Assembly: GCF_006345805.1 (NCBI RefSeq) | Contig: NC_043006.1 | Location: 26,660,001 to 26,724,000 of the forward strand | DNA: 64,000 bases | Source: Octopus sinensis | Lineage: Eukaryota | Direction: 5' to 3' | Part shown: in pieces, positions 28,444 to 63,986 of the stretch | Position numbering within the stretch: position 1 is the first letter of the stretch | Layout of the letters: every line of letters begins with the position of its first letter | Program-made: the position numbers and the translations under genes | Notes under the pieces: generated by a model | The model's database searches: none | What the model was told of the DNA's origin: nothing | The model's input: the letters and a program-made list of their open reading frames with translations, nothing else

Positions 28444-28450
28444 ATGGCAG
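28444..28450 (+). CDS. Candidate first coding exon (ATG GCA G) of the downstream gene
   Basis: gcgaaATGGCAG|gtaaat in a CpG-retaining stretch followed by T-rich intron-like DNA; phase 1, compatible with the 57539 exon. Confidence 0.4.
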
Positions 28451-29239
28451 GTAAATCGCTATTTCAGCTTGCCTGTGATTTAATTTGCTTCATATTAAAG
28501 CAATTTTTTCAGTTATAACTTCTAAATTAATAATAATGCAACTTATGAGTGGGATGTTGACTTTTTCCTAACAAAATTTCATTTTCTGTTAATGTTCTGT
28601 TCGTTGAAACGTTTTCTTTTGTAACTCTTGATTTGTTTTCAGCGTGTTAATATTTTGCTTATAACAAAGTTGTCTAATTCTTTATATTCTCATTATTACA
28701 CGATAAATGCTTTTTATGTAGCGCTGAAATTCTTTATTGTAATAATTTTCGAATAGTAGCTCCTCTTAATTTTGTCTCTTCTCATTAGCTAGAGTGTAAT
28801 AAATTAATGAAAAACTTTATTATGAACTTTTTATTAGAGGAGCCGTTACAAATTTTATGTTTTATATTAGTTAGTTACTAATTGCTAAATTCAAATGGTT
28901 TTATGATCTAAAAATAATTTTCTTAGGTGGAAGCTAAATTTCTTGAGATATATTTTTTGCTTAATTTTCTGTACAGTAAACGGTTTATTGTACATGCTTT
29001 TAGTTAGAAGTTTAGTGATCGTGAAAGAAATTTTCTTTTTTACACTACACTGCGACCACCTTGTTTGTAATAGGGAATAAGTTTTGATACAATCGGAATT
29101 TTTGCTGTGGCTTCTAATTGTTTTGTTGTTACTCTTCCATTTTGCATTAGTGTTTGAGATGGGAATTTGTGATTATATAGAGTTGTTGTTTGTAGCAGAT
29201 GTAAAAGAAATTATTCAGTAAGATTTATATATATATAGA

Positions 29240-29580
29240 TTGGTTTCGGCCATTATTGGTCCAGGTCATGGCTAACTCAATAACACCACCTGGAAAAGTC
29301 TTTTAGTTAGTTATTTCGGGACAACCAACTCTCAAGCAGAGAGTTGGTTTAGACGTATCCCGATGTAGGCGGTTTATCCGGTATTTCCTGGAGGAATTTG
29401 TCCCGGTACCGTTTGAAAGCTGTGGGATCTTTTTCTACTTTGATTTCCTTTGGCATTGAAATGTGCAGGACCATTTGCAGTGAAGAAATTGTGTCGCAAT
29501 GTTCTTATGTGATGTGATCTCGACCTTTGTAGGGGACGTATTGCACGGGGGCCTTGTCTTGGGTGAATTGTAAACATAAA
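29240..29580 (-). mobile_element. CR1/L2-like LINE 3-prime end
   Basis: RQGPRAIRP..RTLRHNFFTANGP.HFN / FKRYRDKFLQEIPDKP. Confidence 0.75.
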
Positions 29581-30324
29581 AAAATTATCATTTTAGGGTT
29601 TTCCTTTCAGTTTCATAAACTTTAGCATTAGTTTTCCTTTCGTCGATTTTCACTTAGCTTGACATATCTAATAACTCATTTCTTATGTGCTCTTTTCTTG
29701 CAAAGCAAATGAGTGAAAAGTCTATTTTGCCTTCTCATTAATTAAGAAAGAGGTGCCGAAAATTTACCTAATATTTCGACAAAAGTTAGCTGGAGTGGAA
29801 TGGGGCTTATATGCTGATGAATTTCTTGTTTCTTTTGGGCTGGTATCATTCTGAAAGACAGGTAAGGAGTTTTAAAAAATGAAATTTTGGAAAAAGATAT
29901 TTTTCAGAGCTTTAGCTGCTATTTCTAGAATGCGGGACGATTGCGTTGAGGCCTCCATCATTTCGTCTGCTGGCTCGGAAAGATTTCACGCATGCGTAAA
30001 TGAGCAGACGAGTTTAAAAACATCCGGAATGTCGTCAATGACGGGTGAGATGAGGAATCCGAAAGGTGGGAGAGGGGTTACAATTGAAATTTTTGTAAAC
30101 AAAAATATCTAAGGTAAATTACCAAATCGGCGTAACTTCGGTATAAGTACCGGATACATTTCAAGAAAGTGTTTTTTTTATATATATATATGGTGGGGTT
30201 AGGTTTAGGGGTGGGAGAAAAGGGTTTCTGTTATCTTCAGAAATGTAAACAAAGTCACGTGTGTACTTATATCGAAGGATCGCCACCAAATCTACTTTTC
30301 AAAATCTGCTCTCCATGTGGAATT

Positions 30325-31120
30325 CCGAATTTGGAAAGACTTCCGCCCACCTCCCATTTTCTCCCAAATTTGTTTATTTTTTTTTATTGTTTTTGTCAAC
30401 AATAGGCGCAGAAGTGGCTGTGTGGTAAGTAGCTTGCTAACCAACCACATGGTTCCGGGTTCAGTCCCACTGCGTGGTACCTTGGGCAAGTGTCTTCTGC
30501 TATAGCCTCGGGCCGACCAAAGCCTTGTGAGTGGATTTGGTAGACGGAAACTGAAAGAAGCCTGTCGTATATATGTATATATATATATATATGTATGTGT
30601 GTTTGTTTGTGTGTCTGTGTTTGTCCCCCTAGCATTGCTTGACAACCGATGCTGGTGTGTTTACGTCCCCGTCACTTAGCGGTTCGGCAAAACAGTGACC
30701 GATAGAATAAGTACTGTGCTTACAAAAAAAGAATAAGTCCCAGGGTCGAGTTGCTCGACTAAAGGCGGTGGTCCAGCATGGCCGCAGTCAAATGACTGAA
30801 ACAAGTAAAAGAGTAAAGAGTAAACCCCTGTTTTCGGATACGGAGGCTCCGGAAAATTGCCAAACATCGGCAGTTAACCCCCCCCCCCCAAACATTCTTC
30901 AATTTTGACTTTTTCCCCAACACTAACCCTAACTCGGAAAGACTTCCACTCGTCCCCCCCCCTTTTCTCCCAAATTTGCTTATTTAAAAAGAATTTTTTG
31001 CCAAAAACCCTTATTTTCGGATACAGAGGTTCTGGAAAATTGCCAAAAATCAGCAGTTAAATTTCCCCCCCAATTCTTTAATTTTGACTTTTTACCCCAA
31101 CACTAACGCTGGCCCTAACT
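30325..31120. repeat. Unclassified ~183-bp tandem units interrupted by a SINE
   Basis: ttttcggatac at 30831 and 31014; ggaaagacttcc at ~30333 and ~30937; ccccaacactaac in each unit. Confidence 0.65.
30405..30821 (+). mobile_element. SINE family A (tRNA-like head, CORE-like centre, CR1-like tail)
   Basis: ggcgca..tggctgtgtggtaag (A box), ggttcagtcc (B box), ccttgggcaagtgtctt; tail shared with the CR1 end at ~32550; copies at 38202-38627(-), 45815-46195(-), 48923-49346(-), 60263-60675(+) and a variant at 14270-14640. Confidence 0.88.
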
Positions 31121-31433
31121 GTAAGTACAGAAATGTTTTTAATTTTTTGTCCGAATCATAATGTCCGTATTTTTCTGCATATTTAGAAAAAAAAAAAATC
31201 TTTAAAAAAATTTTACAAAACGTTTTGGAAATTTTAATCTCCGTATTTTTCTGCATATTTTGAAAAAAATTTCTGAAAAATGAAGGAAATGGGAGTAGTG
31301 ATTTAAAAAGCCAATTTTTTTGCAGATTCGTATTCCCCGTAGCCAAAAGGGGTGGGGGTTGTCTCGAAAAAAATTTTTAAGCGGGTGGCTTTTTTTGGGT
31401 GGGGGATGGGCAGAAGTCTTGCCACAACTTGTA

Positions 31434-31614
31434 ACAAAAACATCTTTAGATGATTTTTTCCGGAGCATATTCACCATCTACTTCAATTATTGCTTCCCAT
31501 TTGCTTTGCAGATGGTCAGACCGTCATTTAAAGATGTTTTTGTTAAATATCATTATTGCTTTTGTTGAATAAAATTTGTTGATAAAAAGCCGCAATAATT
31601 ATGCACCAACCCAA
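31434..31614 (-). mobile_element. Mariner-derived MITE, left end truncated
   Basis: Hsmar1/MADE1-like TIR ttgggttggtgcataattattgcgg on the minus strand; inner 22-bp inverted repeat; centre encodes a transposase C-terminus (DHLQSKWEAIIEVDGEY). Confidence 0.7.
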
Positions 31615-62106: not shown

Positions 62107-62142
<36 letters not shown>

Positions 62143-62339
62143 CAAACATGTGTGTGTGTGTGTAGTTGTCAGTAGATCATATATCCAAAAAAGAAGTATA
62201 CTCTAAAAATTAGAGCTGCAATTTATATACAGGAAGTTAGTTGTATGGCTGGTCATAGAGTGACCAATGGTTTCACATCCATAAAATACTTTGCTTTATA
62301 GATGACTCATCAAACTCCAATGGCCACAGATATATATAT

Positions 62340-62590
62340 ATGTCTGTGCACATCTTTCAATACCATGTATGCAATAAGGTCTGCAAATCTAATGGAGGCC
62401 TCATAAGACATTTTAAGATTCACAGAGATCAGAACTTAACTGCAGCTTTTGGTGGTCCAAATCAGATGTGCAATCTATGTGGGTGTCTTTTCAGAACATT
62501 GCCTGGTTCAAAAAGCCACATCAGATGCCATGATGGTTCTAAGGTGAAGGTACAGGAGGTGGTCATAAGGAGTAGACAACCACCATACAT
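62340..62590 (+). mobile_element. RTE-type LINE 3-prime end with two C2H2-like fingers
   Basis: HVCNKVCKSNGGLIRHFKIH and CNLCGCLFRTLPGSKSHIRCH; bounded by TA and (TACA) repeats; no splice sites. Confidence 0.6.
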
Positions 62591-63159
62591 ACATGGGTGT
62601 GTGTGTGTATTAAGATATATATATATATGTATATATATGTATAGATATAGATATATAGGTTATTTTAAAATTAAAGTTTAGATAGGAGGCTTTGGAATGT
62701 AGTATCCAAACCTTCTTTTGCATATGTCCCTAGTTGTGTGCATTGAAAACATGTTCAACACATACAGCTACCAGGCATCATCCATGGTACTGCACTTTAG
62801 CCACAGGATCTATGTAAGGAATTCTTCAGTGTACATTTAGTATATTTTAAATGGTAGATAAGGAAGACAGAATTTACTGTAAACTTTATTTAACATGATG
62901 ATTGTTTCGGCTTACATGTGTACTGCTCCCATGTGGATGGGGAACGATATAATGAAATTGAATGCATTCCACAGTGCAGAAGAAACCTCATCAGGTTACA
63001 CAATGCATCACAGTATTATAATATGTACATTTTGCTACTGTGTGTGGCAAGATGGTGTTAGTATGATGTGTGTGCTTATAGGAGTTCACAAATTCGTTGA
63101 TCAGGTAGGATGTTTGGTATGTATTCAGGGAGTGACACACACATATATGTGTGTGTGTG

Positions 63160-63560
63160 TATATAGTCAATCACCTGTTATCCATCACTATGTGATGACC
63201 ACAATCAATGTTTTCCTTAGTGGTGATAATTGCAGGACATCCATATGCTGGGTTATCTTTAAGATTCTCTCTTTCCCTCTTAAATTCAACTGCCCACGCT
63301 TGAAGTTGCTAAAGCTGAAGTGTCATCCTCTAATGTCAGCATGAATGCTCTTGGGGGTTAAATGCTTTTCCTGCAGGTATTTGATAACACCACGATGTCA
63401 AATTTTGTTGACTACTGAAGAGAAGTCACTACTAGTTACTTTTGAAGTTTTCTTTGAACAGTCAGATATCAGTTTACCTAGAAAGGAAGAATGCAGTTAT
63501 TAATTAGAGGAGTTGAAATTAATGCATGCAAGGTTTTACAGCTGTATTATCACTCCTTCA
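63160..63560 (-). mobile_element. Mariner 5-prime fragment
   Basis: Degenerate NKI.HRGVIKYLQ.K.L.P N-terminal HTH. Confidence 0.65.
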
Positions 63561-63860
63561 TAGTCAACCTATGAGCTTTTCAGCCCACCCTCATAAATGA
63601 GATAAGATACTTGAAACATTGATGTCTTTGTCTTCTTAATGTCTTTTTGCAGAATCTAATCGACTTTAGACATTATGCTCACATTCAGATCTTTCGAAGC
63701 CATGTAATTTAGAGAATTAAACAATATCCTGTAACTGATTGATTATTTTACCTGTTTCGGGTAAAAACTTTCAAGAACATTGAATCATTAATTCTATTAT
63801 AAAAGCAAAAGAGATTTTAGTTGCTAAAGACTATTTTATTTGTTTGTATCTATTTCAAAG

Positions 63861-63986
63861 GTGAAATGGATTTGGATTTTCTTCAAACTACTTGGTTTGT
63901 GGTGATGATGATTGCTATTTGTGTGCTTCTTCTAATTCTCATCCTTGTTTGTATCATCAAGTGTGATAGAGGCAGCAAATACTATG
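63861..63986 (+). CDS. L1CAM/neuroglian-like transmembrane and juxtamembrane exon
   Basis: caaag|(G)EMDLDFLQTTWFVVMMIAICVLLLILILVCIIKCDRGSKYY+G|gtaagt; resembles the L1-family WFxxMM...CxIxxxRGGKY motif, with a phase-1 intron right after KYx as in L1 genes. Confidence 0.85.

What the first reader, a model, noticed from the sequence alone, without database searches (positions are those of the whole stretch)
28444..63986. L1CAM/neuroglian-like gene that appears to lack almost its whole ectodomain
Seen: three in-phase exons encode one FN3 domain with four N-glycosylation sequons (NIT, NET, NFT, NLT), a TM helix, and an RGSKYY juxtamembrane followed by a phase-1 intron. Established: L1-family proteins have 6 Ig plus about 5 FN3 domains. 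I find no Ig or FN3 exon between the same-strand GALNT stop (22686) and 57539; much of that interval is assigned to TEs. The best upstream exon (ATG GCA G, phase 1) would give MAAPSITDW... with no signal peptide. Inference: a truncated FN3-TM-tail paralogue, an internal-promoter short isoform, a GALNT nested in a huge intron, or a misjoin.
Basis: partly seen in the sequence, partly recalled or inferred. Interest (0 to 1): 0.72.

Follow-up and report, generated by a model that had tools for sequence, protein, structure and literature searches.

The report
Headless neuroglian-like gene in octopus
The octopus genome carries a real, conserved short gene copied from the last five exons of the nerve-cell adhesion gene neuroglian; it keeps one outer domain, the membrane anchor and a shortened tail, and has lost all the adhesive domains and the signal peptide.

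Summary
The window is Octopus sinensis chromosome C10:26,660,001-26,724,000.

- **Gene structure.** Exons at 28393-28450, 57539-57661, 59987-60148 and 63861-63986, plus two exons 3.2 and 5.3 kb beyond the window, reproduce RefSeq XP_029641682.1 ("neurofascin isoform X1", 204 aa) exactly.
- **Conservation.** The same six-exon gene lies just downstream of the same GALNT gene in O. vulgaris, O. bimaculoides and Argonauta hians. This rules out a misjoin.
- **No missing exons.** An L1-family profile finds no further Ig or FN3 exon from 120 kb upstream to 80 kb downstream, nor in the other three loci. Whole-genome searches with neuroglian Ig1-4 and FN3 1-4 give no hit on C10.
- **Origin.** The five homologous exons share intron positions with neuroglian on C5. 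The protein is sister to cephalopod neuroglians (support 99/97).
- **Selection.** Octopus versus Argonauta dN/dS is 0.33 overall (p = 7e-7) and 0.15 in the juxtamembrane segment.
- **Start and tail.** There is no signal peptide. The tail ends GQFNEEGSIIKD*, without FIGQY.

Function and membrane topology are inferred only. The gene is machine-annotated but I found no paper describing it.

The parts
22546..22686 (+). Last coding exon and stop codon of the upstream same-strand GALNT gene. It is not part of the short gene; it marks its 5' neighbour.
   Evidence: The ORF ends ...SDSQKWNFEHYLT* at 22686. It is conserved with Argonauta L027 7970-8107. The orthologous gene carries Glycos_transf_2, Glyco_transf_7C and Ricin_B_lectin.
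28286..28537 (+). Conserved promoter, 5'UTR, first exon and start of intron 1. This is the best-conserved stretch of the locus between Octopus and Argonauta.
   Evidence: blastn gives 77% identity over 257 nt, E = 1e-46, stronger than any coding exon. There is no Rfam match.
28299..28306 (+). TATAAATA, a putative TATA box about 145 nt upstream of the conserved ATG.
   Evidence: Invariant in O. sinensis, O. vulgaris, O. bimaculoides and Argonauta hians. Its promoter function is inferred, not shown.
28393..28450 (+). Coding exon 1 as annotated (MQNNQLCSFRFGRRLSEMA + G). The conserved start codon is the ATG at 28444-28446 (ATG GCA G|GTAAAT, phase 1).
   Evidence: Exact spliced reconstruction of P0022. 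The 17 upstream codons are blocked by an in-frame TGA in Argonauta. The ATG at 28444 has G at -3 and G at +4; the ATG at 28393 has T at -3 and C at +4.
57539..57661 (+). Exon 2: first half of the FN3 domain. Homologous to the first exon of neuroglian FN3-5.
   Evidence: It aligns to O. sinensis neuroglian residues 1047-1101 and to the exon at C5:134852299-134852439.
59987..60148 (+). Exon 3: second half of the FN3 domain.
   Evidence: tblastn E = 3.5e-6 to neuroglian residues 1100-1151. Conserved with Argonauta at 74% nucleotide identity.
63861..63986 (+). Exon 4: stalk, 22-residue TM core and the juxtamembrane KCDRGSKYY. The gene continues beyond the window with exon 5 at window-equivalent 67199-67238 and exon 6 with the stop at 69309-69414.
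   Evidence: The neuroglian profile HMM scores 47.5 bits. KD(19) is 3.64 at residues 129-147.
26012..26053 (+). Counterpart of the alternative first coding exon of O. bimaculoides isoform X2 (MISRSGPFHNMYIF). It is not an open frame here.
   Evidence: tblastn gives 93% identity, with an in-frame TAG at 26024-26026. There is no counterpart in Argonauta.
36084..36569 (-). Reverse-transcriptase fragment of a retroelement inside intron 1. It is filler, not part of the gene product.
   Evidence: Pfam RVT_1, 53.6 bits.

Best explanation
This is a stand-alone, conserved, 'headless' paralogue of neuroglian, the invertebrate L1CAM-family gene.

**Origin (shown, except for the recruitment steps).** A DNA-level duplication copied only the last five exons of the cephalopod neuroglian gene: FN3-5a, FN3-5b, TM, a small acidic exon and the tail exon. 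The copy now lies just downstream of a GALNT gene. I infer that it acquired its own TATA-type promoter and a tiny new first coding exon (ATG GCA G).

**Product (shown).** The protein is 187 aa from the conserved ATG, or 204 aa as annotated in Octopus. In order it has:
- no signal peptide;
- one FN3 domain with four conserved N-glycosylation sequons;
- a 22-residue TM helix;
- the L1-type juxtamembrane motif RGSKYYVKDD;
- a short acidic tail that has lost the FIGQY ankyrin-binding tyrosine.

**Function (inferred).**
- The TM helix probably acts as a reverse signal-anchor (type III, N-terminus outside). That would put the glycosylated FN3 outside the cell and the juxtamembrane segment in the cytoplasm.
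- Having neither homophilic Ig domains nor an ankyrin site, the protein cannot act as an adhesion molecule.
- It most likely modulates L1/neuroglian-type signalling as a genome-encoded 'stub'. It could pair in cis with neuroglian through the membrane-proximal FN3 and TM region. Alternatively it could compete for partners of the juxtamembrane segment, which is its most constrained part.
For: **Gene model**
- The exons reproduce RefSeq XP_029641682.1 (P0022) exactly.
- The same six exons and the same upstream GALNT gene are present in O. vulgaris, O. bimaculoides and Argonauta hians.

**Origin from neuroglian**
- Five exon-for-exon matches to the C5 neuroglian gene; the boundaries coincide within the resolution of the matches.
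- Tree: the short proteins form a 100/100 clade, sister to cephalopod neuroglians, with 99/97 support for the joint clade excluding bivalves.

**No other L1 exons**
- Profile HMM and tblastn across 264 kb, and across the three orthologous loci.
- No hit on C10 in the genome-wide Ig1-4 and FN3 1-4 searches.
- No conserved collinear block in intron 1 against Argonauta apart from one 33-nt match.

**Selection**
- Octopus versus Argonauta: dS 0.81, dN 0.27, omega 0.33, Fisher p = 7e-7.
- FN3 omega 0.36 (p = 5e-4). Juxtamembrane omega 0.15, with 81% amino-acid identity.

**Own promoter and start**
- Conserved TATAAATA and a 250-bp conserved block.
- An in-frame TGA upstream of the ATG in Argonauta.

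**Topology indicators**
- N-terminal KD(9) maximum is 1.13, against 3.79 for the neuroglian signal peptide.
- The N-flank of the TM has no K/R and net charge -3. The C-flank has four K/R.
- All four sequons are kept in Argonauta at 58% identity.

**Fold**
- fn3 at 30.2 bits; AlphaFold2 and Foldseek agree.

**Tail**
- Bravo_FIGEY at 22.2 to 24.6 bits. The sequence ends GSIIKD*.
Against: - I could not inspect any transcript or protein data. The database models are computational predictions.
- Within the genus Octopus (O. sinensis versus O. bimaculoides) omega is 0.65 on only 24 substitutions, which may not differ from neutrality; I did not test it.
- The protein evolves about 2.5 times faster than neuroglian over the same segment: 58% versus 84% identity between Octopus and Argonauta.
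- The tail is decaying. FIGQY is lost in Octopus, and the whole Bravo-like part is absent from the Argonauta model and from 10 kb downstream of it.
- From general knowledge, translocating a fast-folding FN3 domain of about 100 aa without a signal peptide is unusual. The N-outside topology is therefore uncertain.
- Three of the four sequons are inherited from neuroglian FN3-5 and sit in structurally conserved motifs. Their retention is weak evidence.
Confidence: 0.85

Rival explanations
1. Short isoform of a full-length L1-family gene. The Ig and FN3 exons would lie far upstream, with GALNT nested in a giant intron, and the 28.4-kb exon would be an internal promoter.
For: Cephalopod introns can be very long; intron 1 here is 29 kb. 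Only 120 kb upstream was read directly.
Against: - There are no L1-like exons in the 120 kb upstream.
- Whole-genome six-frame searches with neuroglian Ig1-4 and FN3 1-4 return 82 and 94 matches, none of them on C10.
- In Argonauta the gene starts 1.9 kb after GALNT, with an in-frame stop before the ATG.
- Annotations of the Octopus species and Argonauta give only short products.
Confidence: 0.03
2. Assembly misjoin or collapsed duplication that separated the 3' end of a neuroglian gene from its 5' part.
For: None found. O. sinensis has 13,516 contigs.
Against: - The exon order and the GALNT neighbour are identical in four independent assemblies: O. sinensis, O. vulgaris GCA_951406725.2, O. 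bimaculoides GCA_001194135.2 and Argonauta hians GCA_054771915.1.
- There are no N runs in the 264 kb read.
- The sequence is only 36% identical to neuroglian, so it is not a displaced piece of that gene.
Confidence: 0.01
3. Transcribed relic: a partial duplicate drifting towards pseudogenisation, with an open frame but no function.
For: - Omega is 0.65 between O. sinensis and O. bimaculoides.
- FIGQY is lost and the Argonauta tail is truncated.
- The stem branch is long, 1.65 substitutions per site.
- There is no signal peptide.
Against: - The frame is intact in four species across dS of about 0.8.
- Omega is 0.33 overall and 0.15 in the juxtamembrane segment, both significantly below neutral.
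- All splice sites and phases are kept.
- The promoter and first-exon block is the most conserved DNA of the locus.
Confidence: 0.1
4. The product is real, but the FN3 domain stays in the cytosol because no N-terminal translocation occurs. The protein would then act as a membrane-tethered cytoplasmic FN3 adaptor, or would not be a membrane protein at all.
For: There is no signal peptide. From general knowledge, FN3 domains fold fast and about 105 residues precede the TM helix, which disfavours type III insertion.
Against: - The charge distribution fits N-outside, C-inside: no K/R in the N-flank, four K/R in the C-flank.
- The four N-X-S/T sequons are kept in Argonauta.
- The L1-type juxtamembrane motif is the most constrained part, as expected if it faces the cytoplasm as it does in L1.
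- From general knowledge, pro-neuregulin-1 and synaptotagmin-1 show that N-outside insertion without a signal peptide occurs.
Confidence: 0.35

Closest known systems
Neuroglian / L1CAM family (L1CAM, CHL1, NrCAM, neurofascin; Drosophila Nrg). The parent gene here is O. sinensis neuroglian on C5 (P0004, 1295 aa).
   Same: - The membrane-proximal FN3, TM helix, juxtamembrane G-x-KY-x-VKD motif and the D-S-L-x-(D/E)-Y...QFNE(D/E)GS tail segment are homologous.
- Exon partition is the same.
- It nests with cephalopod neuroglians in the tree.
   Different: - It lacks the signal peptide, all six Ig domains and FN3 1-4.
- It lacks the FIGQY tyrosine and the C-terminal part; neuroglian ends ...STFV.
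- It is only 36% identical over the shared 156 residues.
- It evolves about 2.5 times faster.
Proteolytic membrane stubs of vertebrate L1CAM (ADAM10/BACE1 C-terminal fragment of about 32 kDa; plasmin/PC5A fragment of about 80 kDa). From general knowledge, not tested here.
   Same: A membrane-anchored L1 remnant made of the membrane-proximal region, the TM helix and the cytoplasmic domain.
   Different: - Here the stub is encoded by its own gene and promoter instead of being produced by shedding.
- It retains a whole FN3-5.
- It has no FIGQY.
Shortened Dscam (sDscam) of chelicerates
   Same: An IgSF neural receptor family member that has lost N-terminal ectodomain modules through gene-structure change. 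An sDscam FNIII3 domain is among the best structural matches (7y8i).
   Different: From general knowledge, sDscams keep several Ig domains and a signal peptide, and are diversified by tandem 5' cassettes. This gene keeps no Ig domain and is single-copy.
FNDC4 / FNDC5 (irisin precursor) type proteins. From general knowledge.
   Same: Same overall layout and size: one FN3, a TM helix and a short cytoplasmic tail, about 200 aa.
   Different: Those proteins have a cleavable signal peptide and no L1-type juxtamembrane or Bravo-like tail. No homology beyond the generic FN3 fold was seen.
Type III (signal-peptide-less, N-outside) membrane proteins such as pro-neuregulin-1 and synaptotagmin-1. From general knowledge.
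   Same: No N-terminal signal sequence, a single TM helix with positive charges on its C-terminal side, and glycosylation sequons in the N-terminal part.
   Different: The topology of this protein is only predicted. No sequence relationship.

Membership tests
L1CAM / neuroglian family | Six N-terminal Ig domains forming the horseshoe adhesive module | tested here: not met
   No Ig exon in the locus, in 120 kb upstream, or in the three orthologous loci. No hit on C10 with neuroglian Ig1-4 genome-wide. The product is 204 aa.
L1CAM / neuroglian family | Three to five FN3 domains | tested here: not met
   Only one FN3, the homologue of FN3-5.
L1CAM / neuroglian family | Single TM helix followed by the juxtamembrane K-x-x-G-G-K-Y-x-V-K/Q-D/E motif | tested here: met
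   The TM exon scores 47.5 bits against the neuroglian profile. The sequence is KCDRGSKYYVKDD. Omega is 0.15.
L1CAM / neuroglian family | Bravo_FIGEY cytoplasmic domain with the ankyrin-binding FIGQY tyrosine | tested here: not met
   PF13882 scores 22.2 bits in the spliced protein and 24.6 bits in six-frame search, against a cut-off of 23.8. This is a borderline partial match to profile positions 45-80. The sequence ends GSIIKD*, with no Tyr. The segment is absent in Argonauta.
L1CAM / neuroglian family | Descent: nests inside the family in a tree and shares intron positions with a family member | tested here: met
   Sister to cephalopod neuroglians, 99/97. Five exon boundaries coincide with those of the C5 gene within about 2 residues.
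Fibronectin type III domain (Pfam PF00041) | Profile score above the gathering threshold and a seven-strand beta-sandwich fold | tested here: met
   30.2 bits against a cut-off of 25. AlphaFold2 strands at 23-30, 36-42, 51-59, 76-79, 87-96, 99-102 and 106-109, with pLDDT about 90. The top 50 PDB matches are all FN3, with target-normalised TM-scores mostly 0.6-0.79.
Type III (reverse signal-anchor) membrane protein | No cleavable N-terminal signal peptide; one TM helix; positive charges C-terminal of the helix | tested here: met
   Hydropathy and charge counts. This is prediction only; no dedicated signal-peptide predictor was available.
Type III (reverse signal-anchor) membrane protein | N-terminal domain actually translocated and glycosylated | not testable with these tools
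   The only evidence is indirect: four sequons conserved between Octopus and Argonauta.

The most novel reading that the evidence does not exclude
Octopods may have kept, through the whole Octopus-Argonauta divergence, a gene-encoded 'L1 stub'. It would be inserted N-terminus-out without a signal peptide and would act as a dedicated regulator of neuroglian function. It could cap neuroglian in cis through the FN3-5/TM region, or titrate juxtamembrane (FERM/ERM-type) partners. That would be a transcriptional substitute for the protease-generated L1 fragments that regulate neurite growth in vertebrates.
Probability: 0.2. Interest if true: 0.65.

Novelty: new variant of a known kind. Interest (0 to 1): 0.45.

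Why it matters
L1-family proteins are defined by a large Ig/FN3 ectodomain and an ankyrin-binding tail. A family member that has lost both, yet is kept under purifying selection in two octopod superfamilies, isolates the two least understood parts of these molecules: the membrane-proximal FN3/TM region and the juxtamembrane motif.

It offers a natural experiment on what an L1 'stub' does. It is also a clean example of a new gene made by partial 3' duplication plus capture of a new promoter, and a candidate large-domain type III membrane protein.

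Practically, the public name 'neurofascin isoform X1' is misleading. Such models should not be counted as L1 or neurofascin orthologues in comparative studies of cephalopod nervous systems.

Tried and rejected
- **Length-restricted protein search.** A search with the spliced C-terminal part padded to 791 aa (candidates 435-1384 aa) found nothing. The model turned out to be 204 aa and was found with shorter padding.
- The database protein P0022 was used instead.
- **Old O. bimaculoides 280-aa model (XP_014789802).** Its N-terminus looked Ig1-like ('PRIILKDYKPNF...VRLICPSK...IKWW').
  - One piece maps to unconserved intronic sequence at 55245-55382.
  - The other resembles a dispersed repeat found on the minus strand 106 kb upstream and at other sites.
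  - It has no Pfam hit and was dropped from the current RefSeq models. I reject it as spurious.
- **Reading through the exon-1 donor.** This gives MAGKSLFQLACDLICFILK..., which looks like a signal peptide. The frame stops after 24 codons and is broken by a 1-nt indel in Argonauta. Rejected.
- **P0122.** This 215-aa protein seemed to be a short L1 with a signal peptide. It is one ORF of an ordinary multi-Ig gene on a metagenome scaffold. Other short hits are fragments of normal L1 proteins with intact FIGQY.
- **Genome searches with full-length neuroglian** failed twice. They were replaced by three sub-queries.
- **Databases and literature.** There was no Rfam hit on the conserved 5' block. Searches by gene name and by accession found no description of this gene.

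Full report
**Where the window lies.** The window is G000:C10:26,660,001-26,724,000 (+) of a 2.72-Gb, 13,516-contig assembly. The gene studied here is XP_029641682.1 of O. sinensis, and its isoform X2 is recorded on a contig of C10's length. The genome is therefore Octopus sinensis.

**Checking the observation.** Direct reading and translation confirm three phase-1 exons:
- 57539-57661 encodes (A)PSITDWSVIPIDEDSVNITWMTGNETSEYENFYFLEYRQM(G).
- 59987-60148 encodes DNFTENTLEFTTQQWQVLSNLTSGLWYEFRVVMVQNGLEFPSDWRTLLLPLTS(G).
- 63861-63986 encodes EMDLDFLQTTWFVVMMIAICVLLLILILVCIIKCDRGSKYY.

The domain evidence agrees:
- The spliced product scores 30.2 bits on Pfam fn3, against a cut-off of 25.
- AlphaFold2, with an alignment of 19 mollusc neuroglians, gives a seven-strand sandwich at pLDDT about 90 and a helix at 116-152.
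- Foldseek finds 409 PDB matches at E <= 0.001; all 50 listed are FN3 domains.
- The four sequons are at residues 37, 44, 63 and 81.
- The same-strand GALNT gene ends at 22686.

**The rest of the gene.** Beyond the window (locus L002) there are two more exons:
- A 40-nt exon, at window-equivalent 67199-67238, encodes VKDDCLSNDEEEQ.
- The last exon, 69309-69414, encodes (K)TEVDGTEASEKDSLDEYKSTSTGQFNEEGSIIKD*.

The tail is recognisably L1-type. PF13882 Bravo_FIGEY scores 24.6 bits in six-frame search and 22.2 bits in the spliced protein, against a cut-off of 23.8. However, FIGQY is replaced by IIKD followed by a stop, so the ankyrin-binding tyrosine is gone.

The genome has three Bravo_FIGEY tail exons:
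- C5, with FIGQY...STFV, which is neuroglian;
- C4, with FIGAY;
- this one on C10.

**A public gene model exists.** A length-adjusted search found P0022, which is 204 aa and 100% identical. It is recorded as:
- XP_029641682.1 'neurofascin isoform X1' [O. sinensis];
- CAI9728249.1 [O. vulgaris].

Cluster mates are O. bimaculoides XP_052826528.1 ('neural cell adhesion molecule L1.1 isoform X1', 204 aa), a 199-aa X2 isoform, an O. sinensis 164-aa X2 isoform, and an older 280-aa O. bimaculoides model.

A splice-aware reconstruction reproduces P0022 exactly from six exons: 28393-28450, 57539-57661, 59987-60148, 63861-63986, 67199-67238 and 69309-69414.

**Is the ectodomain missing or just far away?** I read 120 kb upstream and 80 kb downstream. 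Several tests found no further L1 exon:
- tblastn with 19 mollusc neuroglians, and a profile HMM of them against every six-frame ORF of at least 20 aa, detect only the FN3-5a, FN3-5b, TM and tail exons.
- The same holds for the orthologous loci of O. vulgaris, O. bimaculoides and Argonauta.
- Whole-genome six-frame searches with neuroglian Ig1-4 and FN3 1-4 return 82 and 94 matches, including all the C5 exons. None is on C10. Only the best candidates are scored in these searches, which is a caveat.
- Comparison of window 22-71 kb with the Argonauta locus shows collinear conservation only at the GALNT exons, the exon-1 block and the coding exons, apart from one 33-nt intronic match at 54955-54987. 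Everything else that matches is dispersed repeat.
- Intron 1 holds retroelement debris: RVT_1 at 36084-36569 (-), a weak RVT_1 at 49859-50764 (+), and a PHD-finger ORF at 44270-44641.

**Not an assembly artefact.** The order 'GALNT, then the short gene', and all six exons, recur in three further assemblies:
- O. vulgaris GCA_951406725.2 (L025);
- O. bimaculoides GCA_001194135.2 (L026);
- Argonauta hians GCA_054771915.1 (L027).

The Argonauta protein (GAB1601094.1, 168 aa, 'neurofascin-like isoform X1') begins MAAPELTGW.... Its gene starts 1.9 kb after GALNT and spans 17.9 kb.

**Start codon and promoter.**
- In Argonauta an in-frame TGA lies four codons upstream of ATG GCA G. The conserved initiator is therefore the ATG at window 28444, which has G at -3 and G at +4.
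- The Octopus-only extension MQNNQLCSFRFGRRLSE starts at a weak-context ATG at 28393.
- The block 28286-28537 is the best-conserved DNA of the whole locus between Octopus and Argonauta: 77% over 257 nt, E = 1e-46.
- That block contains an invariant TATAAATA at 28299-28306, an ATG-TAG mini-uORF, and about 50 nt of intron after the donor.
- A 1-nt indel in Argonauta shows that the intronic part is not coding. This removes a tempting 'MAGKSLFQLACDLICFILK' signal-peptide reading.
- From this I infer an own TATA-type promoter with a transcription start near 28.33 kb. This is not shown.

**No signal peptide.** The highest 9-residue hydropathy in the N-terminus is 1.13 in Octopus and 0.40 in Argonauta, against 3.79 for the neuroglian signal peptide.

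**Origin.**
- The five C-terminal exons correspond one-to-one to the last five exons of neuroglian on C5. The boundaries fall at the same aligned residues within about 2 residues.
- This is therefore a DNA-level partial duplication, not a retrocopy.
- In a maximum-likelihood tree of the shared segment (46 L1-family proteins, 171 columns), the three short proteins form a 100/100 clade on a long stem of 1.65 substitutions per site.
- That clade is sister to the cephalopod neuroglians (Octopus, Argonauta, Acanthosepion). Support for the joint clade, excluding bivalves, is 99/97.
- The monophyly of cephalopod neuroglians themselves has 86/87 support. Whether the duplication predates the octopus-squid split therefore stays open.

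**Selection.**

| Comparison | Segment | dS | dN | omega | Fisher p |
|---|---|---|---|---|---|
| Octopus vs Argonauta | all 156 codons | 0.81 | 0.27 | 0.33 | 7e-7 |
| Octopus vs Argonauta | FN3 | 0.86 | 0.31 | 0.36 | 5e-4 |
| Octopus vs Argonauta | linker + TM | 0.87 | 0.37 | 0.43 | 0.087 |
| Octopus vs Argonauta | juxtamembrane KC(D/E)RGSKYYVKDDCLSND... | 0.54 | 0.08 | 0.15 | 0.009 |
| O. sinensis vs O. bimaculoides | whole CDS (24 substitutions) | 0.056 | 0.036 | 0.65 | not tested |

The Octopus-Argonauta rows come and the last row.
- The juxtamembrane segment is 81% identical at the amino-acid level.
- Between O. sinensis and O. bimaculoides, exons are 95-100% identical, against about 87-93% for aligned intron.
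- Over the same segment, neuroglian is 84% identical between Octopus and Argonauta, while the short gene is 58% identical.
- The Bravo-like tail part is absent from the Argonauta model and from 10 kb downstream of it.
- Overall, the gene is constrained but fast-evolving, and its distal tail is decaying.

**How it probably works (inference).**
- With no K/R and net charge -3 in the 15 residues before the TM core, and four K/R after it, the positive-inside rule predicts an N-outside, C-inside orientation.
- All four sequons are retained in Argonauta (NIT, NGT, NMT, NLT). This fits a luminal or extracellular FN3, although three of them are inherited from neuroglian FN3-5.
- I therefore favour a type III, signal-peptide-less insertion, as known for pro-neuregulin-1 and synaptotagmin-1 (general knowledge). 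I put this at only about 55-60% confidence. About 105 residues precede the TM helix, including an FN3 that probably folds fast.
- Without Ig domains and without FIGQY, the protein cannot mediate L1-type adhesion or ankyrin coupling.
- Its most constrained part is the L1-type juxtamembrane motif. In vertebrate L1 this region binds ERM/FERM proteins (general knowledge).
- The most economical model is a regulator or decoy 'stub' of neuroglian signalling.

**Comparison with known things, and novelty.**
- By descent it is an L1-family gene. By architecture it fails three of the family's defining features: Ig domains, multiple FN3 domains and FIGQY.
- It resembles the protease-generated L1 membrane fragments and, in layout, FNDC5-type proteins. 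The nearest precedent for a shortened IgSF neural receptor is chelicerate sDscam.
- I found no paper describing this gene. It exists only as automatically named models.
- I rate it a new variant of a known kind, of moderate interest.

Noticed in passing
window 28286-28537: A conserved non-coding block of about 250 bp around exon 1, at 77% identity to Argonauta although dS is about 0.8. It contains TATAAATA (28299-28306), a conserved ATG-TAG mini-uORF (28410-28415), and about 50 nt of near-invariant intron directly after the donor. The role of the intronic part is unknown. It has no Rfam match.
   Followed up: partly
G000:C27:5.82-6.47 Mb (outside the window): A tandem array of at least nine exons, each resembling neuroglian Ig1-Ig2 (27-31% identity over about 130 aa). 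Several carry an in-frame TAG. FN3-like exons lie at C27:5.85-5.875 Mb. This may be an expanded or partly decayed L1-like cluster without a Bravo_FIGEY tail hit.
   Followed up: no
G000:C4:39867754-39867924 (-), locus L022: A third L1-type tail exon (...RFNEDGSFIGAYQSHESKGNESNV*). No neuroglian-like Ig or FN3 hits appeared near it in the genome-wide searches. It may be another divergent or truncated family member.
   Followed up: no
G000:C2:91.68-91.81 Mb (outside the window): A very long array of about 70 FN3-like exons on one strand, picked up with neuroglian FN3-1. It probably belongs to a giant FN3-repeat gene.
   Followed up: no
window 26012-26053: The first coding exon of O. bimaculoides isoform X2 (MISRSGPFHNMYIF) has an in-frame TAG in O. 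sinensis and no Argonauta counterpart. This may be why O. sinensis isoform X2 (164 aa) is modelled from an internal Met that truncates the FN3. It is probably a non-productive 5' variant.
   Followed up: partly
window 30.4-30.8, 38.4-38.6, 46.0-46.1 and 60.26-60.67 kb: Copies of a SINE-like repeat (gcgcaggagtggctgtgtggtaag...). It is also multi-copy in the O. bimaculoides and Argonauta loci, so it is an old, widespread octopod element.
   Followed up: no
window 50000-52400: An unusually GC-rich (0.52), strongly C-skewed (-0.50) stretch. It has long low-complexity open frames (419 aa at 51057-52313) next to a weak RVT_1 ORF (49859-50764). Probably part of a retroelement. No Pfam hit.
   Followed up: partly
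Protein P0065 (Logan assembly, 71 aa): In an unnamed octopus-like sample the last exon reads ...GQFNEEGSIIKDWYIATYKPDMF.... The stop codon after IIKD is replaced by Trp there, so the C-terminus of the short protein is not fixed across species.
   Followed up: no
L025 5267-5572 (O. vulgaris; roughly window 23.6-24.0 kb): The O. vulgaris annotation places a 101-aa gene without any Pfam hit between GALNT and the short gene. It was not examined.
   Followed up: no
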